DNA from: Phallusia mammillata
Lineage: Eukaryota
Direction of reading: 5' to 3'
Assembly: GCA_965637545.1 (NCBI GenBank)
Contig: OZ281500.1
Coordinates: 7,068,001-7,132,000, forward strand
DNA length: 64,000 nt
A program made the translations under genes and the position numbers. Below, in pieces: positions 8,210-64,000 of this stretch; positions within the stretch are counted from its first letter, which is position 1; every line of letters begins with the position of its first letter. The notes beneath the pieces were generated by a model, which saw only the letters and a program-made list of their open reading frames with translations, was not told the DNA's origin and did no database searches.

Positions 8210-9115
8210 ATGAACGGTGATCCATACTTGACTGTTGATAATGGCACAAGACCGTCACTGTATTTCCAATCACGAGGAAAGACGTACGACGAAGCAATTA
8301 CTTCCTGTCAAATGGATTACGGTGGAAAACTAGCCGTCCTTAAAGAGCCTGGCTTTTTGGATAGAATATCAGATGTAATACCAACGGCATATTCACATTA
8401 CTACCGCATAGGGTTAAAGAAAGAGGTCAACGAAGATGTTTTCCACTGGGAGGATGGAAGCCTTTTCAAAGACGGTGCGTTGACTATACCCGATGTGGCA
8501 GAAACAAATGACTGTCTGGCAATGAGCGTTTACAAGCCTATTGGGTCAAGCCACGTCTTGCTTCGCCCAGTAGAGTGCGATAGAGCGCTAGCTTACATCT
8601 GTCAAAGCGTGGAATCGCCAGATGATTTGAATGGCAGTCAGACGATTGAAAGAGTGGCACTGGCCGCTGCGATAGCAACAGCGGCAACTGTTTGCCTCCT
8701 TTTAGTTGTAGCTTTTCTAGCGGTTTTCTTGATTCGCAGGAAGTGGGCAATAAAAGAAAGGAAAACGAAACGCGAAACCAAGACAAGTACAACAACAGTT
8801 TTAACGTCGGACAGTGAACATGCTGAAACGCCGTCAAATGAACCCAGTTTCAACACACTGAGTGCAAATCAGGGCACTATCCCAGCGTACCAGGATGTGG
8901 GCTATTGTAGTGTTGATGAACTTGCAGAACAAGGTGCATTTGATTTGGAAAGCGGCGGTAGCGAGGTACACAAAACTGCATCAACACAAGTGTACACAAT
9001 GGCTGAAGATGTCACGGATGTGTCAGCATTGTACAGTGTGGTGAACAAAAAAACAAAACGCAACGCGGTCAAAAACGAAAAAGATAGTTTCGATGACGTA
9101 ACTTCTAACGGTTAG
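8210..9115 (+). CDS. Single-pass membrane protein: C-type lectin-like domain, TM helix and tyrosine-motif cytoplasmic tail (5' end unresolved)
   Basis: 301-aa ORF. CTLD with four canonical Cys (TYDEAITSC..GGKLA..YRIGL..FHWEDG..DC..EC..AYICQ). TM VALAAAIATAATVCLLLVVAFLAVFLI followed by RRK. Tail carries YQDV, VGYCSV, YTMA and ALYSVV. AATAAA at about 9167. Confidence 0.85.
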   Translation: MNGDPYLTVDNGTRPSLYFQSRGKTYDEAITSCQMDYGGKLAVLKEPGFLDRISDVIPTAYSHYYRIGLKKEVNEDVFHWEDGSLFKDGALTIPDVAETNDCLAMSVYKPIGSSHVLLRPVECDRALAYICQSVESPDDLNGSQTIERVALAAAIATAATVCLLLVVAFLAVFLIRRKWAIKERKTKRETKTSTTTVLTSDSEHAETPSNEPSFNTLSANQGTIPAYQDVGYCSVDELAEQGAFDLESGGSEVHKTASTQVYTMAEDVTDVSALYSVVNKKTKRNAVKNEKDSFDDVTSNG

Positions 9116-23265: not shown

Positions 23266-24265
23266 CTAAAAAGTTGATTTTAAGCGATCAAGTAACAGTA
23301 ACACTAAACGCCTTGGTGGCAGGCTACACTTTGTCATAGTAATTTCGCTTTAAATAGGCTTATGTAGGCTATGCAACATTTCTATAATCTGTATAGTACA
23401 ACATTGTAAAGGAATTCATGCTGTAACCAACCTTCTATAACGTCGACTACCGGCATTTCCACTAAACCCGATACCTCCAGCGTTATGAGCTAGTCAGCAA
23501 TTACACAATAACCAGTTTATTAAGTTCCCTTACAACATGCAGACTACAGCCGCAATGCAACTAACCAAGCATGTTCAGCTAATCAATGTCACAGCAACCT
23601 TTGTTTGAAGCTCAGTCGTTTCGACTTCCGACATAAGTTAGGAATGATGCATTGCCTGCTGTCCGCGGCAAAAGATTTCAGTGTTTACACTTTGTTTGCG
23701 TTGCTGTGAAACGTGAACCATGGTATTATGTTGCGTTCGTGAACAATGCCAGACATTTTGCGGACAAAATGTCGACGGTAGGCTAATTTGATTTCAAATA
23801 GCAAAAATTCCATTATAAACACGTGATTAGACAAATTTGCTCGTTGTAATTATGGTTCTATCAAATATTAATGAACTCATCTTTTGTGAACTTTGATATC
23901 ATGTTCGTGATAGACTGCTGTTGAATTGTCCTTTGTAGAGATGTTTAACGAGGTACAGTACTAGTCACGACCATTATACCAAGCAAAGGCCTACAAATTA
24001 TATAAACTAGATTGCACGTTACTAGATTCGGATTGTATATCTCCATAAAATCAAAATATCAAAGATGGTAAACTAGTTTGAGACCAATGTACGGTGCCAA
24101 AAAGTGTCAAACGTTACCCCAAATACCTCAGCTATTTTTGTCATTTCGTCGATTAAAACAGCTATGACGCCAAACAGCCCATTATGACCAAAAAATCAGG
24201 TTCCATTCAAACTTGTGGAGTCCAAAAGTACTGAAATTAGGACAAAAGTGAACAACTGCTTCAAA

Positions 24266-27139
24266 ATGAGATGTAATTCTTCGTTTCGTGTGGATGTGAC
24301 AGACTTTGGGTATGCAGAATCAGAAAAAATAGCTTTTATAAATGATCTGTTGCTTGGAGAGATACCCAGGGAAGATTTGTTAAGTCGACTTACAAAGTGG
24401 AAAAATAGCGACCTCGCAAAGGAAGAAAATGCTTACAAGCTAAAAGGGGTATTCGTGGGGGTACTGGATACCAACCAGAATCAAATAGACAATGACGTTG
24501 TTATAGTGCCAATTTCGCAAGGGCCTGCCAACCAACAAGCTGTTGTGAATACCCTATACTCTGAAATATCTAAAAGCAAAAGCCGTTCGGTCGAGGCTGT
24601 ACTGCAAAAGACAAAGGTTGGTTCTGCCATGTCACTGGACCTTGGAAAACAACTGAAAAAATCCAGAAGATCTGAAAGGCGTTATACTCGAAGTATTGAA
24701 CCCGGCATCGTTAAAAAACTTACAAAAAAGTTCAGTTCAGAAAGTTTGGAAAGTTTTGCAAATGACACAAATAACATGTGTGCAAACGATAAAGTTGTGG
24801 ACAAAAATATACCAAACACAGCAAGCCAAAATGAGGAACTGAAAGGCACAGACAAGGAAACTAACTTTCAAAAACCCAAGCCTCACCCACGAAAATGCAA
24901 TCGACCATCTCGGGAAGGTAGACGCAATACAGGCTCTTTAGCTCCTACTTCTGGTCGGTTTTCAAACTCTTCTGATTCTGATAATTCAGACTGGAGTGCA
25001 ATGGGTTCAAACATGGTTGGAAAAAAAGATTTGCGCATTATGGCAAGCATGTCATCATTAACTACAGACAGTAGCAAACCGTCACCGCGAAAGGTTCAAT
25101 ACAAATCCTCGTATCAACTGAAAAAAGAAAGATTAGCACAGGAGAACAACGGCAAGCAACTCATTATTGGTCGCCCAAAACAGCACCCTCATAAAGCGGA
25201 AACCAAACAGCTAAACTATTACAAAGAAGATACCTCGTCTCCAATGCAACCAAACACGGGTATAATAGAAATTGGCAAACGGAAATCACGAACGACAAGA
25301 AATTTTAACGTCAGCACATCCGAGTAAGCATTACAATATATATTTGGTGTGTTACACCAGTGGTCGGCAACCGACGGTCCGCAACCCGGTGCCAGTCCGC
25401 GAGGAGTTCGTTACCGGACCGTATACTTTTTCAAGTTAAATGCTTCAAAACGTTTAGCCCATGTATCGCAGGAAATATCGAATAATTTCAGCGCTTTTAT
25501 TGCTAATTATTTGTGTTTTTGCTGAAGGCCGGTCCGCGATAAAATTTCAGTTTCAAAAACGGTCCGCAGTAAAAAAAAGATTGCCGACCCCAGTGTAACA
25601 CGAATGATAACACTCTGTACAGCACCTAGAAAATGCAGTTATATTTTGTTAATGCTGTGGTGTCATTTCAGCAGCAATTCCGATCTGGGTCAAGTCAGAC
25701 CGAAATCACTCGCAGAATGTTTTTCTCCTTCCCCTCGTTGTGTGGACCACATCCGCTATCCCTTTACCGATAGCTCTTCTTCCTCTGAAGATCGTATGTT
25801 CAACGCAGAAAGACAGAACAGACGAAATCTAGAGAGCGCCATGTCGCCGAAACGGGCGGGTAAATACTAAGCCTTGCAATAGCTTTTCTTCCATGTGTAG
25901 GGGCCAGAATTGTAAGTGGGCCCAAAACCAGAAAGTAGAAACCTTAGCCCCTCCAGAACCGATAACAAAGCCTGTATTACAATCACGAACGTTAGTGAAA
26001 ATACGACAAAAAATGATCTTGAGTACAAAGTCAGGTTCGATTTAAGCTGGTTTTATTGAAACTCTATCCCAAATCCGCCCTGACTTCCAACTTTGAAACA
26101 CAGTATACACACAAGTATGGAAATGCAATTACGGTAGCAACGCTGTGGCTACCAGTTTATCCGCATAGTAAATGTTTACGTGTAAGCAGTGTGCAAGTGC
26201 GCAGCTTAGTGGGTAGCCTACATTTGAATTATGAAATTCTATCTTTCTAATTGTTTTGTTTATTTAACACCATTTTATTTAGAACTCCAGGACTTGGATT
26301 TCGAGGACTTAAAACGTGAAAACGAGGTCTGGCAATCTCTTCGGCGCAAAGTAGATGAACCCACACGGAAGGAAAGACGAAATTTCTCCCCACCTAATCA
26401 ACGGGTGGAAGAATACAAGGAACGCGTGCGTCGGTTCAGCCTAGATCAAGACGCACAGCACGCCAAGGCCCTTAGCCAACGCAAACCATTGCTAAAATCT
26501 CTTAAATCATTGGGCCCTCTTATAACCGCAGCACACAAAATGCGAGTACCAGGCGGTGAAAGACAACAACAAGAAAACAGGACCCAGAGTCAACCGAGTC
26601 CCCACAAAGCACCTCTTAAGTCATTGGGACCTTTTACATCAACCGCCCAACAAATGCGAAGATCAAGTGACGAAGCGAAGCGAAGGTTTAATCACGAAAA
26701 CGGCGTGAATCGTGAGCAGCAAAGCTCATGGGACAAAACTAACTGTTGGAAAGGTGCGTAATTATCTTTTTTATTTGTGTTTGGGTATACATTATGGAAT
26801 TTTAACGTTTCCGTGACCAATCGTTGCGTTTATAACCCTGCACAACTTCCATGGCTTTACAAGAGCCTAAATCATTCAAATCTTTTATTGGTGAATCGAT
26901 AAACCCATGCAACTTCCTAGCATTAAAAGTTTAATTCAAGCACCCTTACATATTTACGAGTTTAAGCAAAAAATGTTAGAACGTGTTTTACAGCCCCGAG
27001 TCCCTCAAAAGGTCCAAATCCGCTCAGTGGCACTTATTTTCCATCACAATTCTGCGATTCCTTGATTGCAGTGAAATCCGCCAAGTGCTGTCCACCCAGA
27101 ATGAGAAGCAGAGAATGGGACATCGCCGATTTTAGATGA
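24266..27139 (+). CDS. Uncharacterised, mostly disordered Ser/Lys/Arg-rich protein, 4 exons, about 620 aa
   Basis: Exons 24266-25323, 25672-25859, 26283-26753, 26994-27139 with phases 2, 1, 1 and 1863 nt open. The start could lie upstream via an acceptor at 24199. Internal duplicated motif LKSLGP..A..MR. Confidence 0.75.
25358..25593. mobile_element. hAT-type MITE in intron 1 of the 620-aa gene
   Basis: Ends CAGTGGTCGGCAA / TTGCCGACCCCAG. Internal GGTCCGC repeats. Near-perfect TSD TGTTACAC / TGTAACAC. Confidence 0.8.
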
Positions 27140-27689
27140 CCAAAAAAGGCCCGAGAAAAGGAAAGACTGGAAGCTGAAGTAACAAAACAAGGATTTTTAT
27201 GCTCCGTTTAGACGTGATTCGATCGCAGGAGTTGGTGTATAACTGTTTTTTGCAATACCTACCTACCACAGTAATGCAAGTGTTTTCGCTAAATCAGCAT
27301 GCATGTAATATAAGCAATATGGACTCGACGCTTTTAGTAATTACACAAGGACGTTATTAATAGGTTCGGAGCCAGCCCTATCGATGTACATATCTATGTA
27401 TGATTGTACGCAAAACATGGTTTCTAGATTAGAACAAGTCAGAGCGTTGTATTGTCATAAACGTTCAAAAATGGCTTTTACATGCAGAGCATAATCTGTA
27501 CAACTGTTCTCTGCGCCTTAGATGTCGATTAATCTGATACACGCAAACTGCTAACTTATCATCGACCCAAAAAAGGACGGATACGATTTGCAATAAAACG
27601 TATTTAAGCAGCCTCATCACATGGTAAAAGCATTATTCGTCCGAAACCCGTTGAAAAGTCGATGATTTAGAATCGGAATACGTACAGCA

Positions 27690-29266
27690 ATGAAGACAGA
27701 TACGTTTGGTGTTCTGTGTATGGTAGTTATGTTGGGGCATTGCACTGGAATTTCCTTACCTCAAAATGCTACAGAACGTTCGATCGAGTCGGCTCGATTA
27801 ACTGCGTATTTCCGCAGGATGAGAGAAGTCATGGATGATATCGTGGATGACTATGTAAGAAACTATAGTTGTAAGTTATTACACGCTGCATCAAGGGCTG
27901 GGCTGTAAGTCTGCCGGGGTTTGGGCTTGACGCGGGCCTGAATTTACTTTCCGCAATATGTTTGCTTCATTTTCACCAACTTCTGGGCCTTGTTTTTCGT
28001 TTTTATTCGGGCTCTGGCCGGATTTCGGGTTTTCCGACAAGATGAGCATAAATACCGAATCTGATCAATTTCAGGCCCGCTTACAACTCTGGCTATTATA
28101 TATTTTGTTAGATCCTACAAGAAATGGACTGCGAAAGCGTTAAAATATGCAGAAGACCACTTACAACCCTGAGTCTAACAGTAGCCTACTACCTGTAGTA
28201 AACAATGCAAGCGTAAGTAAACTACAATAAAACACAATTAAACACATTTTTTTACTAATTAAATAAATCTCGTTAATACGTTTTCAAAATATTTTATCAA
28301 GTATCCGTTTACTTCACATAAGCGAAATCAATTGCTGCTAAGTTATAATCAATTTTGTCTCATTTTTCGTCATTTAACTTTCCCTTGGCTACGTTTCACA
28401 GATAAGTAATGGCAACTGGACAGGGGTGATGCAACAAAATCTTAACGGACTGCAGGACTTCAATTACTTTCTACAAGGTTATTTTAGAAACAGACGATCT
28501 TCCGAAGACGAAACTATTGCGAGAAAACTTCATGATCTAGCAGGCTTTCTTTCACAAGTTATACCTGTTTTCACAACCAACGTAAGTCAATTGTATTCGA
28601 ATGTAATGGAGGGTATTTTGGGGTTTCAACAAGCATCTCGAAAGCAAAGCCAGCTGAAGTTTTTCATCCAGCCCGCTGCCGCTGAATATGATATCCCGTC
28701 AAGTTCTTCTTAAAAATTAGGCTATGTGTCAATTATCAAAAAAATACCGCTTGCCGAAATCATATGCATAAATATGCGCACTTTAGTAAAAACGCTGGTC
28801 ACACCACCTCTCTTACTGCAGGCAATTGCAGATATTTGCCAAATCAAAGTTCCTGCTTGGATATTTTCAAAAGTTGATGTAAAAAATCAGCAATGTGACT
28901 CCGTCAAACCTTTGCTGGCCTCTCCTGAGACCTCTTCAAGGCTTTATTAACTACGTTTAAAATAATAAAAAGCTTTTGTGTTTTTTTACGTTTGAACACA
29001 TACTTGCAAAAATACATGGGGCAATTTGCTATGTACTGTTGCATGCGTTCTCGCAGATACAGGAAAACTACTGCTACGACATGAACATCAGGAATCTTAG
29101 CAGCTATCCTCCATGTGACGTGTGTGAACTTCCAACAGTATCAAGTCACTACCTGGAAGTTGTCAGAAACTATTATTTTCTTCTTCAGTTATACGATTAT
29201 GTCGCCGATTTTGACAACTTCTACCAAAAATTCTTGGCATTTGTATCGATTCCTAAACAATGCTAG
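27690..29266 (+). CDS. Secreted 204-aa protein; candidate long-chain four-helix (IL-6/IL-11/CNTF-like) cytokine
   Basis: Exons 27690-27854, 28153-28212, 28402-28581, 29057-29266 total 615 nt, and all three introns are phase 0. Signal peptide MKTDTFGVLCMVVMLGHCTG. Four amphipathic helices. Four Cys in the mature chain. The gene call is better supported than the family call. Confidence 0.7.
27890..28092. repeat. MITE family with (C)CAGAGTTGTAAG-type ends and GCCCG subterminal repeats; several copies in the window
   Basis: Right end CTTACAACTCTGG here and at about 34555. Left end CCAGAGTTGTAA at about 49711. Both ends, degenerate, at about 6672-6816. Further fragments at about 17445-17545 and 25905-25950. 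Confidence 0.65.
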
Positions 29267-29615
29267 GTTATCATCGAAACTTTTTAGTATTCTTTGCTGC
29301 ATTTTTTGAAGTATTACAAATAACTTATATATAGTATAGTATATTCGCAGTAACAATAAAAAAGGATGGTCATGTAAGCCATTTATTAGCGTACCAAAGT
29401 TGAGAAAGGTGATGTAAATAAAGCAATATGTTTAAAATAACTAAATAAAATACACAGGAAAGCCAGTTTTGCATTGATTTGGGAATTTACATTTTATACA
29501 GTAACATGTAAAGAGACAGGAAAGTGCTGATTGTCATCTTAAAGTAAAAGATCACGTTCAGTTAGCATGTTAAGGCGGGTCAGTTTGTTTCATGCCTTGA
29601 GGTGTTCAACTAATA

Positions 29616-45400: not shown

Positions 45401-48400
45401 TATTACAAAACCAAATACTTATAAATTCACCTGGCGGCCGAAAACCTCGAGTCTTGCACCAAGTTAACCGCGTGGTTGTCCGTCAGCAACGAGACCGTGT
45501 AGATAATTTATAAGAGGTACAGGGTGATCCATTACATTTGCTGTCAAAGATCAATAACGAAATGTCTTTCATGCATCTATGCACGGTTTGGCAAAGGCGT
45601 ATTGATCAGAACCACTTAGCCTTTGTCAAGTCGAGCCTTCTGGCAAGCGCTTTCGACAACAGCGCCAACCGCGGCCAGGCTGAAACGTCTCGGAATGCTG
45701 TTTGTATCGATCAAGAGCGCTTATCCCCAACGTAGAAACAACATATCGGTTTGTCCCATATCTAACCCGAGACCCCGAAAAACGCAACCACCGTCGGGCT
45801 CGGTATAAATTGCCCGACTAGTTACCCTTCCACCCTATTGTCGTCGCTGTTGTTTGGTTAGCGTGTGCTCTTCGCGACAGTTCCTCTTTACCGTGAGTGG
45901 CGACGCTGGTCTCGTAGCGCAGTGGTGGACGCTTGTGGACATGGGAGGTACCGGCGATACTTCGACAAGTGAAAGCATTTTTAAGGATGTCGGTCAGTTG
46001 ATTGCTTAAATTGGTGGCGAATGAAAATCAGTCCAGGTGTGAAGACCACGAACATAGACAGATTAAGACAAACGACATAACTAGGTTTTACGTAGCTTTA
46101 AAACGTTTAGAGATAGAGCACAAACGTTGTTAATTTTATAGCTTTATAATCTTTACGAAACTAAACTATTTGAAACTAAACTAAGTGACATATTTTCTGA
46201 CCTCAGAGATTTTAGGTGCGTAAAATTGAAATAACTAACGTCTGAAGGAAAATTTAAATAGCGGCATTTTGGTAAAAATTGTACCAGTAAAATGTTGACT
46301 AATACAGGATTTCCTTGACAGGGTCGTACATCCTTGACAACGGTATAGGTTTCCAAGATAGGAATTGACGAACCCCCTTGTAGTAAATCCTCGTAAGGTT
46401 TATTATGCGTTGAATAGGCGACGCCAAACTTATAAACCTAAGAGATGTCGTGCCTTTGCTTCGGTTGTGTCGGTTTTATAGCCTTAACAAAGATGGCGAT
46501 CCATTGATACTTTGTTGACACAGCTCTAGGGACAACACAACCTCTAAAACGTTGTTCAACACAATAGGGTTACCTTTAGTAACAGTGCCATCACGACAAA
46601 TTAAAACGTCATTTTGGTTGGGATGTCAAAAAAACGCTGAACGGCTGTCATAAACGCACAAGGCTTTGTTTTCTTACTTTGTCGCCGTCACATCCTACAT
46701 GATTAGGCGGAAAAAATAAACATCGCACACAAGTGGTATTGGTTAATCATTACTTTTGGATGGGACGGACGGTTTTGTTTGAGAGGCCGTATCTTGGCTG
46801 ATAACTGCCCAAAGCTGAGAAGGAAACATTTCATTTTTTGGATGTTTTTTCCTTCAAGTTTCTGGTTTTGTGCTTGTAACTGCTGGTTGACAACTATTTC
46901 TGATTTTTTTATTGGTTTTACGCTCTTGGTTCGCGACCCATGTAGCAAACCCATTTAATATGTTGATTAAATTGTTCCATATAGTTCCTTTGACCAAATT
47001 AAGTGTATTCGTTTAAATGAAAGCAAAATGAAGATACCTAAATATCGTTTTAGTTGTTACATTTCCATTAGTATGCGTTCGCAGTGTATTTGAAAACGTT
47101 GGAAAACTTTCGATTGTTTTAAATGTTTGCACCATGGGACAAAAGCATTTTGGGATTCGAGAAGCCGGTGTTGAAATTAACGGATTTATAACACGCCGTT
47201 ACTTTTTATGTCGTAAAGCAACCTCGATCAGCTTTGCTTGTGAAAAACAAGATATTATCGCATGTAAAAGGCGTACTTTAACCAATTATTCCACTGCTCT
47301 GCCGCGCGTCTGTAGCACGAATAACAGCATCCTGAAACACCGAATTGTGTACATGTGTCTTTTATCTATTTACTTGTCAAATCCGCTGTATATTTAACTT
47401 GTTTGCATACGTCCGTTGCATAATTCATGCTATTCTTTTCAGGTAATGGTTTTTCGTTCAAAGTCTGTCCCAACTTGAATCAACTCGTTCTTGCCTTTAC
47501 CACATTGATGTTTTTCGTCTCTTTCGAGTGCCTTCTCATCACAATCATGACTGTTGGACCCGGCCTACAGTCCAGAGGATTTGTTCAGGTCAATTGTACA
47601 GGTGAGATATGTGCCTTAATATTATCGAGTTAGTCGCTTATATTGCAGCACAGTTTAACCAAGTTTTTGCAATCGACCTCTGTTTTAGGTTGTACACCGA
47701 TAATTTGTATGTTCTCATTGTATGCTGGGGTAAAAACTACGGACTCTATCACAATAGGTCAGCGTAAAGCGCGATGTCAAATTAAGTGGATTGCTAACGG
47801 GTGGGATTTGAATCCACAGGAGTGGATGGACCGCACAGATTTTTGCATTGATTTTTTACAAATTTCTTGGCTTGATTCCGTATACCGCACCATCTAGGCC
47901 GGAGGTCTCAAACCGCATGCGGCCCTCCAAAGGTTTTTGTGCGACTCGCGAACTAACTTTTATAATTTAGGTGTTTAAACAACTAATCAGGTATTTCATT
48001 ACCTCAGGTCAAATAAGGTATTTCTATGTAACGGGTTTTTTTGTAGTTGGTTTGCATAAACGCTTAAGAATTGATCTGAAATCGAATGTTTCTGTACTAA
48101 AATTAGTTGCTGACCAAAAATGCAAGTAACGTGTATTTTTGCGCAGTAATCAATACATTCTACAACGGAAATTCCAGTTGTTACGTCAGCACGCTTTCGT
48201 CACACGGCGTCGTTAACGTTTTTCCATGTTTGCAAATCTACGTCACACCCCATACGTCAGCCTCGGCTGCCGCGAACAGGTCGAAACGAAGTTTGTGGCC
48301 CGAAAACAGCGACAGCGCCGAAGTTGAGTCGCCTCGAACAAGAAACAAACGAGCCGCGACGACCGACTTCTCCAATACATCTGCGCTTCTGCTCTTTCAG

Positions 48401-48733
48401 AACGAGTTGAACTTTGCTGGCAACGATTATCTGTACAGAAGGTGCTCGTATTTGCCGGCGTACTGCCCTCAAGACAAGCAAGCGATATTGACGGGCATCA
48501 GTGACCAAGCGCGTAAATACGGACGCATTAACAGCACCTATACATGTTATTACAACGCTGCTCAAAACCGCGTTATGTTACAGCGGCTTATCACGGAGCA
48601 AGCTATGCTGTATTCCATCCTTTGGCCAATTTGTGGGATGATTGCAAGCGCTATTGGCTGTGCAGCGTTTTGGAAGCGAAACTTTAAGCGCATGAGCAGA
48701 CTCTTCATTTACAACAGCTGGTCGGCGTCGTAG
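39455..48733 (+). CDS. KCNMB: Calcium-activated potassium (BK) channel beta-subunit-like protein, 303 aa
   Basis: Exons 39455-39620 (phase-1 donor GTGAGT), 47443-47601 (TM1, ending VNCT) and 48147-48733 total 912 nt. Motifs FPCLQIYV, LLFQNE, RCSYLPAYC, YTCYYN..VMLQRL and TM2 LYSILWPICGMIASAIGCAAF match the KCNMB loop and TM2 (YPCLQVYV..CSYIPKC..FSCY..LFHSLFWP). Pairing of the first exon is inferred from phase. Confidence 0.85.
44490..44610 (+). CDS. Candidate alternative first coding exon of the KCNMB-like gene
   Basis: ATG-initiated MPQNSTSRRSTKLWNFARPDSNNEQIPQQRNHSIAGGGNT plus 1 nt, with phase-1 donor CAG|GTACAA compatible with the acceptor at 47443. Confidence 0.45.
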
Positions 48734-52699: not shown

Positions 52700-55600
52700 A
52701 CACATTCATCTTTAGATGTTTTGGAAACCCAAATACAAGAGAATCATAAGACCTACTTAAATCAATTCAAACTCTGCTAAGTTTCACTGCTTTATGGAAC
52801 AAAACATACTTAATGAGGATAAATATATAACAACAGGGGAAAACTTAGACAAGTTAGACAAGCCAACAAATCAAAAATCTTCATTAATGAAAGTTTAACA
52901 AAAATGAACAAAAAGCTGTTTAACTGCTGTCTGCATCACAAAAAATCAGCAAATCTTCAGTACATATGGACAAAAAATGGAACAATTCCTTTGAAAAAGG
53001 ATGATGAAAGTGCAACCATTGCTATACGGAATATAGAGGACATGAGTCTTCACAACATTCCATGGGATGATGTAGAAGCCTCAAGGATTGTTGACAAGTA
53101 ATGTATATATATATCCACAGCTTTTGTCCTGGTGATAAATTATTATTGTTAGTTTTTCCTTTTTTACTTGTTGTTACACTGTCTCAAATGAATACTACAT
53201 TTAAATGACTGGAATGGCAACATATTATGATATAACTGATTATAATTCCTTACTTTCAACTGTCTCTTGTAATGACATTGTGATAATTCATTTTAATGTA
53301 AGAAGTTTGACAAAAAACTATGATGTTTTGATGGAGTTCATTGATACCTGTAATTTAAAGCCCGACATCATTGCAATCTCCGAAACCAAACTCAATGATC
53401 AAACCTCTTTAAATGTTAGCATATCCGGATACAACTTTGTTCAGCATAATTCTGAAACACATGCTGGTGGGGTTGGTTTGTACATTAAAGAATCATTCAC
53501 ATTTAATATTACTAAAACATATTTCATTGCAATGCCAAAATGTGAAAACCTTTGGGTTGAGCTACAACTTCAGGATACAAAACATGTGATCATAGGGGTG
53601 GTATACCGACATCCAAGTTATAACATTTCCGAATTTCAGACAAACTTAGAAAAATGTCTGTTTGCTCTAAATAAAAAGAAAACTGTTTTTTACATTCTTG
53701 GGGATTTCAATATTGACCTAAGTACTAGCAGTACACTATGCAACAACTACAAGGAAATGTTGACAAGCCTAAACATAAAACCATTGATCAATACATACTC
53801 TCACATAGCTCCTTCCCTAACAAGATCTGCCATAGATCATATATATACAAATAATGACATAGGGCAACTCGTACCTGGTTTAGTAGAATTTGATATATCT
53901 GACCATCTTCCAATATTCGTCATTGCCAAACACATCCCACACAAAGTAGTCACCACAACAAGGAAATTCAGAACCTATAAAAACTTCAATCTAGAAAGCT
54001 ATTGTGAAGATATACTGCAAATCCAAGCCAACGTCATATTACCTTCATCTGTTGAAGAAACAATGGTTCACATAATGTCGCTTTTGCAAGAAGTAATAAA
54101 CAAACATGCACCATATGCTAAGCCTCCCAAAAATCGTCGCAAACATAACCCATGGATCACAAGAGCAATTCTGAACTCCATTAACACTAAGAACAAAATG
54201 TACAAAAAACAATCCACTCGGACAACACAAACATCAAAACAACTTACAAACTTTATGCAAAAATGCTTAAAAATGTCATAACAAAATCTAAACAACTTTA
54301 CTACACAAACCTTTTTACAGCTAACCAAAACAATCCCCAAAAAACCTGGCAGACAATACGGAATATCACCTCACACAAACAAACAAAACACAACAACATC
54401 ACAAAAGTTACAAATAACTCACAACACATTACAGATCCCACATTAATAGCTGATGCATTCAACACCTACTTTTCGACAATTGGCAGCAACATGGCAAGCA
54501 AAATTCTCTCTACACCACAACCTCCAACATTATTTCTTCCCTGTCCGACTTCAAATTCATTTTCATTTATACCTACAGATGCAAGTGAGGTTTATAATAT
54601 TATAATGGCACTAAACGAAAGGAAGGCACCAGGACCATACGATATACCTGTAAACTTGCTTAAACTTGGTGCCCCATATCTATCTCATCTGCTTAGTGAC
54701 ATATTCAATGAATGTGTTCATTCCGGTGTCTATCCCAATTGTCTAAAACTGGCAAAAGTCATTCCGTGCTTCAAAGGTGGGAATTCCCAGGAAATGTCCA
54801 ACTACCGGCCAATATCACTGTTACCAATTGTGTCAAAAGTGCTTGAAAGATTAATACACAGCAGAATGACAGATTACCTGCACAAGTTTAAACTCATTAC
54901 CAAGTTCCAGAACGGCTTCCGACCCAAACACTCCACAAGTCTGACTATAGCAGAAATTCATGACCAACTTGTTTTAAATTGTGACAATGGTCAAATCACC
55001 TGTGGAGTTTTCTTGGATTTGGCAAAAGCATTTGACACTGTTGACCACACCATACTGCTGCAAAAGTTAAGTTGCTATGGTTTTAGAGGACACATACTGG
55101 ATTTTTTTAAAAGTTACCTGACAGATCGGAAGCAAATTACTCACATCTATCCAAACCACAATTCTGGCAGCCAAGATATGACTTGTGGCATTCCACAAGG
55201 ATCTATTTTGGGTCCTTTGCTTTTTATATTATATATAAATGACTTGCCAACAGCATCTAGATTTAACACAAGATTATTTGCGGATGACACATTTCTCTGG
55301 ATGTCAGGCAGCAACTTCTCTGTACTACAAAAAAATGTACATGAAGAATTTGGCAAGGTTGACCAATGGATGCGGGCAAACAAGTTGTCACTAAACTACA
55401 AAAAAACAAAATTTATGATATTCACCAAGAAGAAAGATATCCTTCATTCCAAATTTAAAATAACATATGGACACAACTCTATAGAAGAGGTGCAAACAGT
55501 GAAATACCTTGGCGTGTTTTTTGACAACAAATTAAATTTTAAACCCCACATACAATATCTTCGCAAAAAAATTAGTTGCAGTGCTGGCATGCTTGCCAAG

Positions 55601-56152
55601 CTACGACGTCTGCCTGAAAACATTAAACACGTTGGTTTTCACACATTCAAAAAGAAAGTAAAGCAGTTTCTTGTTAGCAAATACGCTTTATTTTAAAATT
55701 TGTTCAGTCATTACATGCTGCCCCCACCCACGTGCTGTGGTAAACATGCCTTGCATTGTTTTTGTTCTGATTACTGTGTCCAATCAACAACTATTACGCG
55801 CTGCTGGCCTTCTTTTTTCCTTGCTAATTTGCCCTCCAGCTTTTCAAATCAATCCTGCGATCGTTCTTCCATTGTATTGCTATTATGTTTCTTTATTTTA
55901 TTACGTATCGTTGCTGCTGCATTGCTCAGCAACTTCGCCCTAACAGTCACTCTTTCGGTCTAGGTGACCGCTAATTACCCATCGTCCTTTTTCGTAGTTC
56001 ATCGCTACTGAATAAACAATAGTAGGTCAATGACTTGGCGGCCAATGATTGGCCTTTCATTGACCCGTCACGCAGATACTTTTGTTGTGCAATTTCGTTT
56101 TTTTTCTCGTTGTGCAATGTCTCGTGACAAATAAACCATTGAATTGAAATTG
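52700..56152 (+). mobile_element. Non-LTR retrotransposon of the CR1/L2 group (Crack/Daphne-like), decayed; 5' boundary uncertain
   Basis: ORF1 remnant KIFINESLTKMNKKLF..YIWTKNG. AP endonuclease 53205-54281 (HFNVRSL, IAISETKL, GDFN, IDHI, SDH). RT 54263-55696 (NYRPISLLP, FLDLAKAFDTVDH, GIPQGSILGPLLF, FADDT, KYLG). Frameshift near 54265. 3' end AATAAA plus (A)TTGA repeats. Confidence 0.92.
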
Positions 56153-60374: not shown

Positions 60375-61927
60375 TTATATGTCATGCAAAATAGCCATTA
60401 GAAGCTGTTTTTTAACACATTTAACACAAAAAGCTTGAACAAAATTTTGATCAAATGAAACAACTTTCATTCGTGTAACTAGTGGATTAACAACATACAC
60501 CCCAATCATTTTTGAGTCACAAGGATATTTAAATAAACTTTGAGGATTAGGATATAATCGGCATAAATATTTAACGGAACTATCAGTGTCTCCACAAATC
60601 TTGCTTACTACATCCACACACATGACGTCTGATTTTCCAAAGTTAATGACAAAAGAGTTATTTGGTTCTTTGGTAGGTAGGTCACATATCACTTTACTTG
60701 AAAGTTTTCTGACAGAACTTTTTTCGTGTACACGTTTGACAACTTGTGCGATTGGATTCTTTCCTGATCTAACCATTTTTTTTAACCCTTGCAAAAAATT
60801 CTCAAATTTAAACCCACTGCAAGCATCTAGACCACCAAAGTGAATAGCATCCTCGGACAAGTGCAACAAGCTATGAATGTTGTACACCATGAACTCCTGG
60901 CCATACAAGGTTCTACAATTAGAGACAAAATCTCTCATCAGTGAACTTGCAATTGACGATTGTAACGAGACCAATGACGGAGATATCAAAATTGCCATTG
61001 CAATGCTAAGAGTCAAAAAATGATTGTACAATTTTTTGGGCAAAACTTTATGAAGCACAATTTTTCCAGTATATAACAAAAACTGTCGGAACTCAGTTGC
61101 TTTCCAGTGTTCTATTTCCTTTAATGTTCTTGGTTTTCTTGCAAATACAGAGGGTACAAAAGATTTGAGGTGGATCAGTTTTTCAGAAATTAAATTTATT
61201 TGTTGTACCCCTAGTCTAACATTTTTAGGGCCTCTAACCCATGTTACTAAAAGTTTTTTCATGACACCCAAGCACACTTGGTGCATATAATCAATAGGAA
61301 ACTGTTTTACCATGTTGATAGGCAGGCCACAAAATGGAGATAAACTGTTGTGATGCTGTTTGTTTACTTGGCTACGAAAAGACTCATCAGTTCGTTCAAC
61401 ATAATTACATGTTTCTTGGTATGTCATGCGACCCACCCAAGTACCCTGTTGAGCACATTTGTCACATCCATAATACCCACAAAAAAGTTTTGTTCCTTTA
61501 ACCATTGATCGTGCAGGAGCATCACAAACTACACTGTGGATCTTGCATGCAAAAGTAATACCCTTGTAAAAAATTCCATGTGTCAAAATATTATTCAGTT
61601 CTTGTATGAAATCTTCTAAAAAGTCCAAGTTCGATGGTTTAGATAATCCATATGTAAGACACACACAAAATACACATTTTAAGTTTACTATGCAACCAAC
61701 TACAGGCCAAAAACAAGATTTGGAACTTTTGAACAAAGGCAAACCATCAATATTAAAAGCAAGTTCCAAGTGCTTAGGCAACATTTCTTTTTCTTCAAAC
61801 ACATCTAGTTGAGCAATAATCTTTTTTTGCAAGCCAAAATTGTAGTACTGCATTCCAGACTTGTTAGTAATGGAAATATTTGTTTGTGTCTGAAGAAGTG
61901 TCCGTGAACAGGATGGAACATCTTTAA
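60375..61927 (-). CDS. EnSpm/CACTA-type DDE transposase; 5' end cut off by the Kolobok insertion
   Basis: RTLL.T, LAFNIDGLPLFKSS..FWP, VCDAPARSMVKG..GYYGCDKC, DYMHQVCLGVMK, WKATEFRQFLLYTG, YNIHSLLHL, FKFENFL..PIAQV. The ORF-track start (MPGL) is Kolobok terminal sequence. Confidence 0.88.
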
Positions 61928-64000
61928 AGAGCCCCGGCACCGGAAAATTATTTTTTAATATGTTGTTTGTCGTATTTTTATAAACACGATTTCAAATTTA
62001 AAACCACAAAAATCGATGTTACTAGTCAAATATTTATGTTTTAAATCTAAAAACACTGACACCTTGCGGATATTTTGTCACTTAGCTCAAACGCCATGTG
62101 ACGTCACCTCGTACCAACTTGGTTTGGAGCTTGTTTGTAGTCGGTGGTTGTTAACGTTCTGCGACGCCAATTACGTTAGTTAGTTTAGGTATTTTGGTGT
62201 TTAAATGTTTTCATTTTTATACTCAAGTGTGAAAAAATGCCTGCAGTGTGTTCTTTGTATGGTTGCAATTCAAGAGGAAATCAAAAGGCCAGCAATATGA
62301 CACTTTTTCGCTTTCCAAATATAAAGCGATTGCGGTCACCTTGGATTAAATTTGTTAACGTGAAAAAAGGGACCAGCGAAATACAGTGTTCTTTGTAGCC
62401 TACATTTCACAGATGAATGTTTCACAAATAAAATGCAGCAGACAGGGGTATGGCAAAAGTTCTGGTGTTAAAGCCAAATGCCATTCCATGTATTCATTAG
62501 AACAGTCTTCTTCAGCAAGAAATGGCATTGAGAGCAGCTGCAAGAAAAGTAGCACATGGTATGCTTTAATTAACTGTTTTCTGACATAATCTCATTTAAC
62601 ATTATAGTCTTTAATATTACCATTATGTCATACTAATTTAGTTTATTTTCATGCCATTTACTTGGTAATAACAAAAAAGTGTGGTTATGAAAAAAAGGTG
62701 TGATAATATCAATACATTTTCATTTGGGAACCACCCAATCTAAGCTATGAACCAAAATACATTGTGTGTAAAGGAAAACTTCTTTACCTCTTAAATGGTG
62801 TAACAGAAGTAAATTAACTGCAGATTTCCCTGGACACTCAGCTAAATTTAGTACATACACAATGATGGATGATGGATCTTTGCAACAATAAAATTGTTGC
62901 TATTAACCTTGTTAATGTATTCAGATGGTAATTTCATAATATTTTCTAGAGCAATGAAGTGGCAAACAGCAATGATATGGAAAAAGGATTCTTGGGATGC
63001 ATTGAAAACATCACAAGCAAAGGATTGTTTATTAAAGCCTTTGTGACTGACAGGCATCCACAAATCATTAAATACATTAGTGAAGAATCGTCAGAAACAA
63101 AACATTATGTTTGGCATGTAGCTACAAGTATGATAGAAATAAAAGATGAGCATACACCGGTATATTTGTGTTTATGGTTTTCAATTCAGAAATCCAAAAG
63201 AAACTGACAGCACTTTCTAACAAAGCATGTTGCAAAGAGTTGGGACCTTGGGTGAAAAGCATATGCAACCACATGTATTGTTGTGCAGCAACATCACAAG
63301 GGAATTCACAACTTATAGTTGACAAGTGGCTGTCAGTCTGGCAACGTGACTCTGAAGTCTTCCCCAGCACCATTCAACAAATTTTCTGTAGGCAGTATAC
63401 ATGTAACGCATAGAGATTGCTGGTTGCATGTTAGTAGTTAGTACAGTAAAACTTACTCGTGACGGGTGTTAATTACCCTTATCAAGATTTCCCAATTGAC
63501 GTTTAAATCGATAACATGCTGCTTCTAATACACGTTGAGACATGTAGATTCAAATCCAGGATATACTTTTATACAAAGCAGATTAGACTCGGAATATTCG
63601 TTGAACTTGGCTAACTGCTGTTGCACTTACTAATTTCATGGCAGCAAACGCATGATTTTCTCTCCTCCATTATCACATAGTTAATACATAAACACCTGCA
63701 ATAATTCTGTTACGTGGAAAATACCTTTTGTCAACAACAAAACACCTACCTTTTTAAGCAAACAGTTGTTATTTATTGCTTAACTGTCAACTACGTATAC
63801 TACGTTAGTTTTATCAGTTGTAAACAATAAAAAAATGTACGCATCAAAGCTAAAACAAGCAATAAAAACAACAGCTGATCAACGCCATTGTTAGAAGTTG
63901 GTACGATGTGACGTAACAATCGCTGCTACATATCAAACCAAGGTGTCGCTCGAGAGCTCATTGTTTGATTGAATATCTCGAAAACGAGAAATCATAGGAC
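61928..64000 (+). mobile_element. Kolobok DNA transposon, copy 2 (internally deleted; right end just outside the window)
   Basis: TTAA followed by AGAGCCCCGGCACC. THAP remnant from about 62238 and transposase fragments to about 63340. Convergent KolX fragments on the minus strand. Confidence 0.88.
63350..63710 (-). pseudogene. KolX (P2X7 C-terminal ballast-like) gene remnant of the Kolobok element
   Basis: Three decayed exons: C.N..IMEERKSCVCCHEI, then LCIKVYPGFESTCLN..LEAACYRF, then YMYTAYRKFVEWCWGRL. Confidence 0.8.

What the first reader, a model, noticed from the sequence alone, without database searches (positions are those of the whole stretch)
27690..29266. Candidate invertebrate-chordate IL-6-family (gp130-type) cytokine hidden as four small phase-0 exons
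SEEN: four exons joined by three phase-0 introns give a 204-aa secreted protein that the ORF track does not show. It comprises a signal peptide, helix A (LTAYFRRMREVMDDIVDDY), a 20-aa loop exon (KTTYNPESNSSLLPVVNNAS), an exon with helices B and C (GVMQQNLNGLQDFNYFLQGYFRNR-RSSEDETIARKLHDLAGFLSQ), and a last exon with a Pro/Cys loop and helix D (HYLEVVRNYYFLLQLYDYVADFDNFYQKFL). KNOWN (from memory, to be verified): IL-6, IL-11 and G-CSF are about 200 aa with phase-0 introns separating helix A, the AB loop, helices B+C, and the CD loop+D. CNTF, LIF and OSM have an intron right after a Tyr ending helix A. By-eye matches are CNTF RKIRSDLTALTESY and LQENLQAYRTFHVLL, IL-6 [21 protein letters not shown]..LIQFL, and IL-11 SLPTL..GVL. 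INFERENCE: this may be a ligand for the gp130/domeless-like receptors reported in ascidians, for which I know of no described ligand.
Basis: partly seen in the sequence, partly recalled or inferred. Interest (0 to 1): 0.92.

Follow-up and report, generated by a model that had tools for sequence, protein, structure and literature searches.

The report
Sea-squirt IL-6-like four-helix cytokine gene
This is a real four-exon gene of a small sea-squirt family of secreted proteins predicted to fold like the vertebrate IL-6 group of cytokines, so it is a testable candidate ligand for the orphan gp130-like receptor of tunicates, although the copy in this window is broken by five extra letters in exon 2.

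Summary
The gene is real.

Exon 2 was misread:
- It starts at 28112, not 28153.
- It encodes a conserved C-x5-C loop in another frame.
- In this window it is 101 nt long and hits a stop at 28196.
- Contigs of two public read sets lack 5 letters at 28182. That gives a 96-nt exon, the length seen in three relatives, and an intact 216-aa protein.

This protein matches two uncharacterised Clavelina lepadiformis proteins end to end (35% identity, E=1e-47). It also matches three intronless transcripts and a four-exon gene on metagenome contigs.

Evidence for the fold:
- AlphaFold models of two relatives (pTM 0.77 and 0.78) are four-helix bundles with long AB and CD loops.
- Searches of the PDB return only helical cytokines at the top: IL-11, CLCF1 and IL-6 at Z 15-17, with the first unrelated fold at Z 8-9.
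- A language-model search gives LIF, CNTF, IL-6, G-CSF and IL-11 clusters.
- The C-x5-C loop, a G-L-x2-[FY]-x3-L motif and three phase-0 introns echo IL-6.

Limits: HMMER finds no known family, and expression and receptor binding are untested. I found no prior description in the papers searched.

The parts
27602..27609 (+). TATA-like tatttaag about 80 nt upstream of the start codon. A 'tacag' at 27683-27687 just before the ATG could instead be a trans-splice acceptor.
   Evidence: Read from the sequence. This is inference only, with no transcript data.
27690..27854 (+). Exon 1, 55 codons: signal peptide (about residues 1-20) and most of helix A. It ends ...DDY and has donor gtaaga.
   Evidence: It aligns to exon 1 of P0004 and of the L005 gene, and the intron falls in the same alignment column.
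28112..28212 (+). True exon 2: end of helix A, the C-x5-C loop and the 'TxLxLxxLP' stretch of the AB loop. It is 101 nt in the window, so the frame is broken. It is 96 nt in the read contigs.
   Evidence: tblastn of P0004, P0012 and P0008 hits 28112-28183 in the +1 frame. Exon 2 is 96 nt in L004, L007 and L005. Acceptor ttgttag|, donor |gtaagt.
28182..28186 (+). Five letters present in the window but absent from the contigs of runs X1 and X2. They shift the frame into TAG at 28196-28198. They are either an assembly error or a null allele.
   Evidence: read-laying table 4: 'left out 5' at 28182 in X1 (98.4 of 98.4) and X2 (275.2 of 275.2). Removing them gives ...TLSLTVLPVVNNAS.
28153..28212 (+). 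Its internal acceptor and frame are an artefact of the 5-nt frameshift.
28402..28581 (+). Exon 3, 60 codons: conserved Trp, helix B with GLQDFNYFL, a short BC loop and helix C.
   Evidence: It is 180 nt, as in both Clavelina genes.
29057..29266 (+). Exon 4, 69 codons plus TAG: end of helix C, the CD loop with Cys and C-x2-C, helix D (LEVVRNYYFLLQLYDY...) and a C-terminal Cys.
   Evidence: phmmer of this exon alone found the family (E 7e-18 to 1e-4).
29355..29449 (+). Three AATAAA/ATTAAA poly(A) signals, starting at 29355, 29417 and 29444, in the 3' flank.
   Evidence: Inference only.
28822..28878 (+). It is not supported.
   Evidence: No relative has residues between the exon 3 and exon 4 equivalents. 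The reads also differ here by 1 nt at 28817.

Best explanation
The locus encodes a member of a tunicate family of secreted proteins of about 215-230 aa. Each has a signal peptide and six conserved cysteines; the window protein also has several N-glycosylation sequons. The proteins are predicted to adopt the long-chain up-up-down-down four-helix bundle of class I helical cytokines, and they lie nearest to the IL-6/IL-11/CLCF1 (gp130) group.

The likely mechanism is inferred, not shown. The protein would be secreted and would bind and oligomerise a tall gp130/domeless-type receptor, activating JAK/STAT. The most conserved surface is the disulfide-capped tip formed by the start of the AB loop and the N-terminal half of helix D. 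That region corresponds to 'site III' of IL-6-type cytokines.

In this window the copy is interrupted by 5 extra letters in exon 2. Two public read sets of the species carry the intact form.

My sub-confidences are:
- real conserved gene: 0.95
- helical-cytokine fold: 0.85
- homologous to the vertebrate IL-6/G-CSF group: 0.6
- signals through a gp130-like receptor: 0.5
For: - The gene is conserved. The corrected 216-aa protein matches P0004 at 35% identity over 208 aa with 3 gaps (E=1e-47), P0012 at E=5e-40 and P0008 at E=8e-25.
- Four genomic loci share four exons with identical phase-0 intron columns.
- Only the exons are conserved between the loci.
- Relatives are expressed. P0008, P0013 and P0014 sit as uninterrupted ORFs on contigs of about 1 kb, as spliced mRNA would; I take L001-L003 and L008 to be marine metatranscriptome assemblies from their sample ids, which I did not check.
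- Fold: the models have pLDDT 78.7/pTM 0.77 and pLDDT 79.9/pTM 0.78, each with four long helices.
- PDB scans give IL-11 Z 17.0 (rmsd 2.6 A, 163 of 165 residues), CLCF1 16.3-16.9 and IL-6 14.2-15.4. The top 21-26 rows are all helical cytokines.
- The Foldseek top 50 are all long-chain helical cytokines.
- The language-model neighbours are LIF, cardiotrophin-2/CNTF, IL6, G-CSF-like and IL-11 clusters at 0.92-0.95.
- Motifs: C-x5-C after helix A in 6 of 7 members, and G-L-x2-[FY]-x3-L in helix B in 6 of 7. They correspond to human IL-6 C44-C50 and to the second half of the IL-6/G-CSF/MGF signature (PMC3271213).
- IL-6 genes have three introns in the cytokine domain, and lamprey IL-6.2 and skate lack the signal-peptide intron (PMC13081863).
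- Ciona has a gp130-like receptor with no ligand identified in that study (PMC1963337).
Against: - No HMMER match to any Pfam cytokine family or to any PDB cytokine sequence, even at E up to 10.
- The C-x9-C half of the IL-6 signature is absent, and the other four cysteines have no IL-6 counterpart.
- The models come from an alignment of only 11 rows, and they are of relatives, not of the window protein.
- Helical bundles can reach Z of about 14 by chance, according to the tool's own note.
- GH/prolactin-type hormones score nearly as high (Z 15).
- No RNA of this species covers the locus.
- The window copy has a premature stop.
- No conserved synteny was found.
- The exon 4 search listed no protein from any other named species, so no annotated Ciona or Styela homologue was seen.
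Confidence: 0.6

Rival explanations
1. It is a long-chain helical hormone or cytokine of another branch (GH/prolactin-like or leptin-like). It would act through a different class I receptor, such as CRLF3 or a short homodimeric receptor, rather than a gp130-type one.
For: - Placental lactogen and prolactin score Z 14.9-15.2, within about 2 of the best IL-6-family hits.
- Hormone_1 clusters are among the language-model neighbours at 0.94.
- A cysteine at the end of helix C and another at the C-terminus recall leptin's single disulfide. That comparison is from my memory.
Against: - The seven or eight best structural families are mostly gp130 ligands.
- The C-x5-C loop and the G-L-x2-[FY]-x3-L motif are IL-6/G-CSF traits (PMC3271213).
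- The only class I receptors reported in Ciona are a gp130-like one and CLF-3 (PMC1963337).
Confidence: 0.15
2. It is a tunicate-specific secreted four-helix protein that resembles cytokines only by convergence. It would have some other role, such as a matrix, tunic, carrier or antimicrobial protein.
For: - There is no detectable sequence homology to any known family.
- The family was seen only in tunicate-derived sequences.
- The tool warns that helical models can reach Z of about 14 without kinship.
Against: - The up-up-down-down topology with two long crossover loops is rare.
- The matches cover whole cytokine chains, for example 163 of 165 residues.
- Unrelated bundles align to only about 113 residues, at Z 9.2 or less.
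- Motifs, intron architecture, size, signal peptide and glycosylation sites all fit a cytokine.
Confidence: 0.15
3. In this genome the locus is a pseudogene. The 5-nt insertion is real and the gene makes no functional protein in the sequenced individual.
For: - The window reads 101 nt in exon 2, with TAG at 28196.
- A 5-nt insertion in non-repetitive sequence is not a typical consensus error.
Against: - Both read sets lack the 5 letters at full contig depth.
- Across 2 kb, X1 differs from the window by no substitution and only two indels. That pattern suggests assembly indel errors rather than a diverged allele.
- The rest of the coding sequence is intact and conserved.
- Even if the insertion is real, it would be one allele, not the state of the species.
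Confidence: 0.3
4. It is a class II (interferon/IL-10-type) cytokine. Those genes also tend to have all phase-0 introns.
For: - Interferon genes are described as having 0-0-0-0 intron phases (bioRxiv 10.64898/2026.05.30.728932).
- Fish and mouse type I interferons appear at Z 9.5-10.4.
Against: - Interferons and IL-10-family members score 4-7 Z units below the IL-6 family.
- The models have four long helices, not five or six.
- All language-model neighbours are class I long-chain families.
Confidence: 0.05

Closest known systems
Interleukin-6 (human IL-6, PDB 1ALU and 1P9M; IL-6/G-CSF/MGF family, Pfam PF00489)
   Same: - Predicted long-chain four-helix bundle: Z 15.4, rmsd 2.4 A, 151 of 157 residues. 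It is also the best Foldseek hit.
- Highest sequence identity among the P0004-model matches, at 13-15%.
- C-x5-C directly after helix A.
- G-L-x2-[FY]-x3-L in helix B.
- Three introns within the cytokine domain, placed after helix A, within the AB loop and after helix C. That these IL-6 introns are all phase 0 is my memory of the human exon sizes (19/191/114/147/168 nt).
- Similar size, plus a signal peptide and N-glycosylation.
   Different: - No Pfam or HMMER match.
- The C-x9-C disulfide before helix B is missing.
- There are four further conserved cysteines (end of helix C, C-x2-C in the CD loop, C-terminus) that IL-6 lacks.
- No intron in the signal peptide. That state is also seen in lamprey IL-6.2 and skate (PMC13081863).
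- No TOMM7 neighbour was seen.
IL-11 and CLCF1/CNTF (PDB 8QY4, 4MHL, 8D7H, 8D74)
   Same: They are the best structural superpositions, at Z 16-17 and covering 161-175 residues. All are gp130 ligands.
   Different: Sequence identity is only 6-14%. Mammalian IL-11 has no cysteines (PMC3271213). The FxxK site-III motif of CNTF and LIF (from memory) is not conserved in the family.
Lamprey and hagfish IL-6-like genes (bioRxiv 2026, PMC13081863)
   Same: They were also invisible to sequence searches and were found by structure, gene architecture and synteny. Some have four coding exons with three domain introns.
   Different: Those genes are vertebrate, keep TOMM7 synteny and were tested functionally (STAT5, SOCS). 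The tunicate family lies outside vertebrates, shows no synteny and is untested.
Drosophila Unpaired (Upd1-3), ligands of Domeless
   Same: They are invertebrate secreted helical ligands of a gp130-like receptor. They are the only well-studied non-vertebrate analogue.
   Different: By my memory, Upd proteins are about twice as long and have no solved structure.

Membership tests
IL-6/G-CSF/MGF family (Pfam PF00489; related PF16647, PF07400, PF01110, PF01291) | Significant match to the family profile HMM | tested here: not met
   hmmscan of the window exons and of P0004, P0012, P0008, P0013 and P0014 at E up to 10 gave no cytokine family. A family profile searched against PDB sequences gave no IL-6-type chain.
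IL-6/G-CSF/MGF family | Signature C-x9-C-x6-G-L-x2-[FY]-x3-L (as quoted in PMC3271213) | tested here: not met
   Only the second half is present. G-L-x2-[FY]-x3-L occurs in helix B in 6 of 7 members, including the window (GLQDFNYFL). The C-x9-C pair is absent in all.
IL-6/G-CSF/MGF family | First disulfide loop C-x5-C at the start of the AB loop (human IL-6 C44-C50) | tested here: met
   C-x5-C follows helix A in 6 of 7 members, and P0013 has C-x7-C. In the window it is CESVKIC at 28130-28150. The bond itself was not verified.
IL-6/G-CSF/MGF family | Gene architecture: three introns in the cytokine domain separating helix A, the AB loop, helices B+C, and the CD loop plus helix D | tested here: met
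   On the tunicate side, four loci have identical phase-0 intron columns. On the vertebrate side the evidence is PMC13081863 (one signal-peptide intron plus three domain introns) and my memory of the human exon sizes for the phases.
IL-6/G-CSF/MGF family | Conserved microsynteny with TOMM7 (PMC13081863) | tested here: inconclusive
   The called neighbours in Clavelina are PID, PDE12-like, SNF2-helicase and claudin genes. The window ORFs are a lectin, CaKB and a LINE. Nothing besides the gene is conserved between loci. A tiny multi-exon TOMM7 could have been missed.
Long-chain class I helical cytokines (four-helix cytokine superfamily) | Up-up-down-down four-helix bundle with long AB and CD crossover loops | tested here: met
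   The P0004 and P0008 models show this layout. The top 21-26 rows of exhaustive PDB scans are all helical cytokines. The window protein was not modelled itself; it is 35% identical to P0004 with 3 gaps.
Long-chain class I helical cytokines | Secreted protein of about 160-200 mature residues with a signal peptide | tested here: met
No dedicated signal-peptide predictor was available.
gp130-type cytokines | Binds a gp130/LIFR-type receptor and activates JAK/STAT | not testable with these tools
   No complex prediction or assay was available. A gp130-like receptor exists in Ciona (PMC1963337). Two unverified notes report gp130-like receptor genes in this same genome.
Class II cytokines (interferon/IL-10) | Bundle of five to seven helices matching IFN or IL-10 structures best | tested here: not met
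   Interferons score Z 9.5-10.4 and IL-22 scores 7.2-8.1, well below the IL-6 family.

The most novel reading that the evidence does not exclude
This family is the tunicate pro-orthologue of the vertebrate IL-6/G-CSF/IL-11 group and the missing ligand of the tunicate gp130-like receptor. If so, a complete gp130 cytokine-receptor-JAK-STAT axis existed in the common ancestor of tunicates and vertebrates, before the vertebrate genome duplications.
Probability: 0.45. Interest if true: 0.88.

Novelty: new member of a known kind. Interest (0 to 1): 0.78.

Why it matters
A 2026 survey reports that IL-6 was detected only in vertebrates (PMC13203501). IL-6 of jawless vertebrates was recognised only in 2026, through structure-guided work (PMC13081863). 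Ciona has had a gp130-like receptor on record since 2007, and that study named no ligand for it (PMC1963337).

A conserved tunicate gene family with the IL-6-type fold, an IL-6-like disulfide loop and helix B motif, and the same intron plan gives a concrete candidate ligand. It can be expressed and tested against the gp130-like receptors noted in the same genome.

That would date the origin of the gp130 cytokine system. It would also give a simple chordate model, before the vertebrate genome duplications, for IL-6-type signalling. The finding also shows how one small indel in an assembly can hide, and distort, a short multi-exon gene.

Tried and rejected
- **Pfam on the three reader exons and on five full-length relatives:** nothing relevant.
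- **Family profile against PDB sequences:** only de novo bundles, and interferon-beta at E=0.87.
- **P0002 and P0003 from the exon 4 search:** false positives. They are Ig/PKD-repeat surface proteins.
- **Enlarging the family:** three word-indexed searches added only P0013 and P0014.
- **RNA of this species:** 12 runs listed as possible RNA hold almost none of the locus's words. Two of them were laid and gave nothing.
- **ESM Atlas by shape:** only bacterial proteins at TM below 0.4. Exon 4 alone in the Atlas gave nothing.
- **Paralogues in the window:** none.
- **Synteny between the window, L004, L005 and L007:** none beyond the gene itself.
- **Allelic dN/dS in Clavelina:** 0.76 from 6 non-synonymous and 2 synonymous changes, too few to interpret.
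- **ATTTA motifs in the 3' UTRs:** enriched in some relatives but not clearly in the window.
- **Splice rescues of the window allele:** I considered donor GTAGCC at 28181, or donor GTAGTA at 28195 with an acceptor at 28406. I set them aside once the reads showed the 5-nt difference.
- **Window protein as a whole:** it could not be submitted to the search or fold tools. A spliced sequence has no reference, and I did not type it.
- **Profile-profile comparison with IL-6 alignments:** not possible, because no IL-6 sequences were on hand.

Full report
**1. The observation**

The window is AT-rich animal DNA with no N runs. They are 165, 60, 180 and 210 nt long and join to a 204-aa protein. That protein has a hydrophobic N-terminus and five N-x-S/T sequons. 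None of the exons I scanned (1, 3 and 4) matches Pfam, and the window holds no paralogue.

**2. Relatives exist, and they correct exon 2**

I ran an exhaustive phmmer search of exon 4 alone against 1.84 billion representative proteins. It found six true relatives, with E from 7e-18 to 1e-4, and two false positives made of Ig-like repeats. The relatives are:
- P0004 and P0012, two 'uncharacterized' RefSeq proteins from separate loci of the ascidian Clavelina lepadiformis.
- P0008, and later P0013 and P0014, which are uninterrupted ORFs on contigs of about 1 kb, as spliced mRNAs would be; I take L001-L003 and L008 to be marine metatranscriptome assemblies from their sample ids.
- P0001, P0006 and P0007, which are exon-4-like pieces on metagenome contigs.

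It reads ILQEMDCESVKICRRPLTTLSLTV and sits behind the acceptor ttgttag|, in phase 0 with exon 1. That frame then runs into TAG at 28196. Exon 2 (28112-28212) is therefore 101 nt long, which is not a multiple of three.

**3. The break is five letters that the reads do not have**

I laid the contigs of two public runs of the species on 27500-29500.
- Both leave out 5 letters at 28182, at full contig depth (98 and 275).
- Both leave out one letter at 28817. X2 also leaves out one letter at 29408.
- X1 shows no substitution and X2 shows one.

Without the five letters, exon 2 is 96 nt and ends ...TLSLTVLPVVNNAS. Exon 2 is also exactly 96 nt in both Clavelina genes and in a four-exon gene on metagenome contigs L005/L006.

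- P0004: 35% identity over 208 aa, 3 gaps, E=1e-47.
- P0012: E=5e-40.
- P0008: E=8e-25.

The intron positions fall in identical alignment columns in all four genomic loci, and all are phase 0.

The pattern of indels without substitutions points to assembly indel errors. A real null allele in the reference individual cannot be excluded. Two runs labelled as possible RNA held nothing on the locus, so expression in this species is untested.

**4. What the protein is**

All seven full-length members share the following:
- six cysteines in the mature part (a signal peptide is evident in six; P0013 lacks its start)
- C-x5-C just after helix A (C-x7-C in P0013)
- a 'T-S-L-R-L-x-x-L-P' stretch
- a conserved Trp
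- G-L-x2-[FY]-x3-L in helix B, in 6 of 7 members
- 'L-P-S-x-x-L-E-V-x-R-N-Y-x-F' opening helix D
- a C-terminal Cys.

HMMER finds no Pfam family and no PDB cytokine.

AlphaFold2 on an 11-row alignment gave confident models for P0004 and P0008:

| Model | pLDDT | pTM | Helices (residues) |
|---|---|---|---|
| P0004 | 78.7 | 0.77 | 31-61, 94-118, 125-153, 179-213 |
| P0008 | 79.9 | 0.78 | 22-52, 85-117, 124-156, 180-211 |

Both models have long AB and CD loops and a short BC loop.

Foldseek against the PDB returns only long-chain helical cytokines in the top 50 for both models. IL-6 is first for P0004 (E=1.9e-3, TM 0.73 by target).

An exhaustive VIA-align scan of 48,161 representative chains gives these Z-scores:

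| Match | P0004 model | P0008 model |
|---|---|---|
| IL-11 | 17.0 | 16.0 |
| CLCF1 | 16.3 | 16.9 |
| IL-6 | 15.4 | 14.2 |
| Placental lactogen | 14.9 | 15.2 |
| OSM | 14.3 | 13.8 |
| IL-27p28 | 14.3 | 14.3 |
| CNTF | 13.8 | 13.9 |
| LIF | 13.4 | 14.0 |
| First non-cytokine (partial ferritin match) | 7.8 | 9.2 |

The tool warns that helical bundles can reach Z of about 14 by chance. Here, though, the matches cover entire cytokine chains, and a clear gap separates them from unrelated bundles.

An independent language-model search with P0004 lists LIF, GH-like, cardiotrophin-2/CNTF, IL6, G-CSF-like and IL-11 clusters at 0.92-0.95. All ten best hits belong to one clan.

**5. Comparison with IL-6**

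PMC3271213 gives the IL-6/G-CSF/MGF signature as C-x9-C-x6-G-L-x2-[FY]-x3-L and the first human IL-6 disulfide as C44-C50, which is a C-x5-C. The tunicate family has the C-x5-C and the G-L-x2-[FY]-x3-L half, but not the C-x9-C.

[quoted passage not shown] It adds that lamprey IL-6.2 and skate have lost the first. That leaves the four-exon plan seen here. From my memory of the human exon sizes, the three domain introns of IL-6 are phase 0.

Membership by profile is not shown. Resemblance in fold, motifs and gene plan is.

**6. Mechanism, context and novelty**

By analogy, the protein would be secreted and would bridge gp130/domeless-type receptor chains to activate JAK/STAT. The strongest conservation lies at the start of the AB loop and the N-terminal half of helix D. 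In this topology both sit at the same tip as site III of IL-6-type cytokines. This is inference; I could not inspect model coordinates.

Supporting context:
- Ciona has a gp130-like receptor and CLF-3 as its only class I receptors (PMC1963337).
- Two unverified notes of this scan report gp130-like receptor genes elsewhere in this genome.
- A 2026 survey found IL-6 only in vertebrates (PMC13203501).
- My paper searches found no tunicate IL-6-like ligand.

**7. Limits**

- The window's own protein could not be folded or searched as a whole, because a spliced sequence has no reference.
- There is no profile-profile test against IL-6 alignments.
- There are no transcripts from this species.
- No synteny was found.
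- Allelic dN/dS in Clavelina is uninformative.

Noticed in passing
window 28817 and 29408: The read contigs also leave out one letter at 28817 (X1 and X2) and one at 29408 (X2 only). X2 has T>C at 28602. Indels outnumber substitutions, which hints that this assembly carries small indel errors that could break other short genes.
   Followed up: partly
window 28066-28093 (intron 1): 31-letter contigs at depths of 145-1500 pile up here. This marks a short, high-copy repeat inside intron 1.
   Followed up: no
window 53205-55696 (+): Two overlapping ORFs carry an endonuclease/exonuclease/phosphatase domain and a reverse transcriptase domain. This is a non-LTR (LINE-type) retrotransposon whose ORF2 is split by a frameshift.
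   Followed up: partly
window 8210-9115 (+): A 301-aa single ORF has a C-type lectin domain followed by a transmembrane-like segment.
   Followed up: partly
window 48107-48733 (+): This ORF matches the calcium-activated potassium channel beta subunit family (CaKB, E=5e-14).
   Followed up: partly
window 24215-25327 (+), 26231-26761 (+) and 60375-61940 (-): Long ORFs of 370, 176 and 521 aa have no Pfam family. The 370-aa ORF, just upstream of the cytokine-like gene, also has no convincing language-model neighbour. It may be disordered or non-coding.
   Followed up: partly
L004/L010 and L007/L011 (Clavelina lepadiformis): Clavelina has two paralogues on different chromosomes. The two assemblies differ by six amino acids in one gene and by about nine plus an indel in the other. 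RefSeq lists three isoforms with alternative first exons for LOC143468855. The family therefore seems to evolve fast.
   Followed up: partly
ESM Atlas clusters: The neighbours include a cluster of 114 mostly molluscan 'hypothetical proteins', 11% of which carry Pfam IL6, and an arthropod cluster without a family. Other invertebrate IL-6-like candidates may be sitting in the databases.
   Followed up: no
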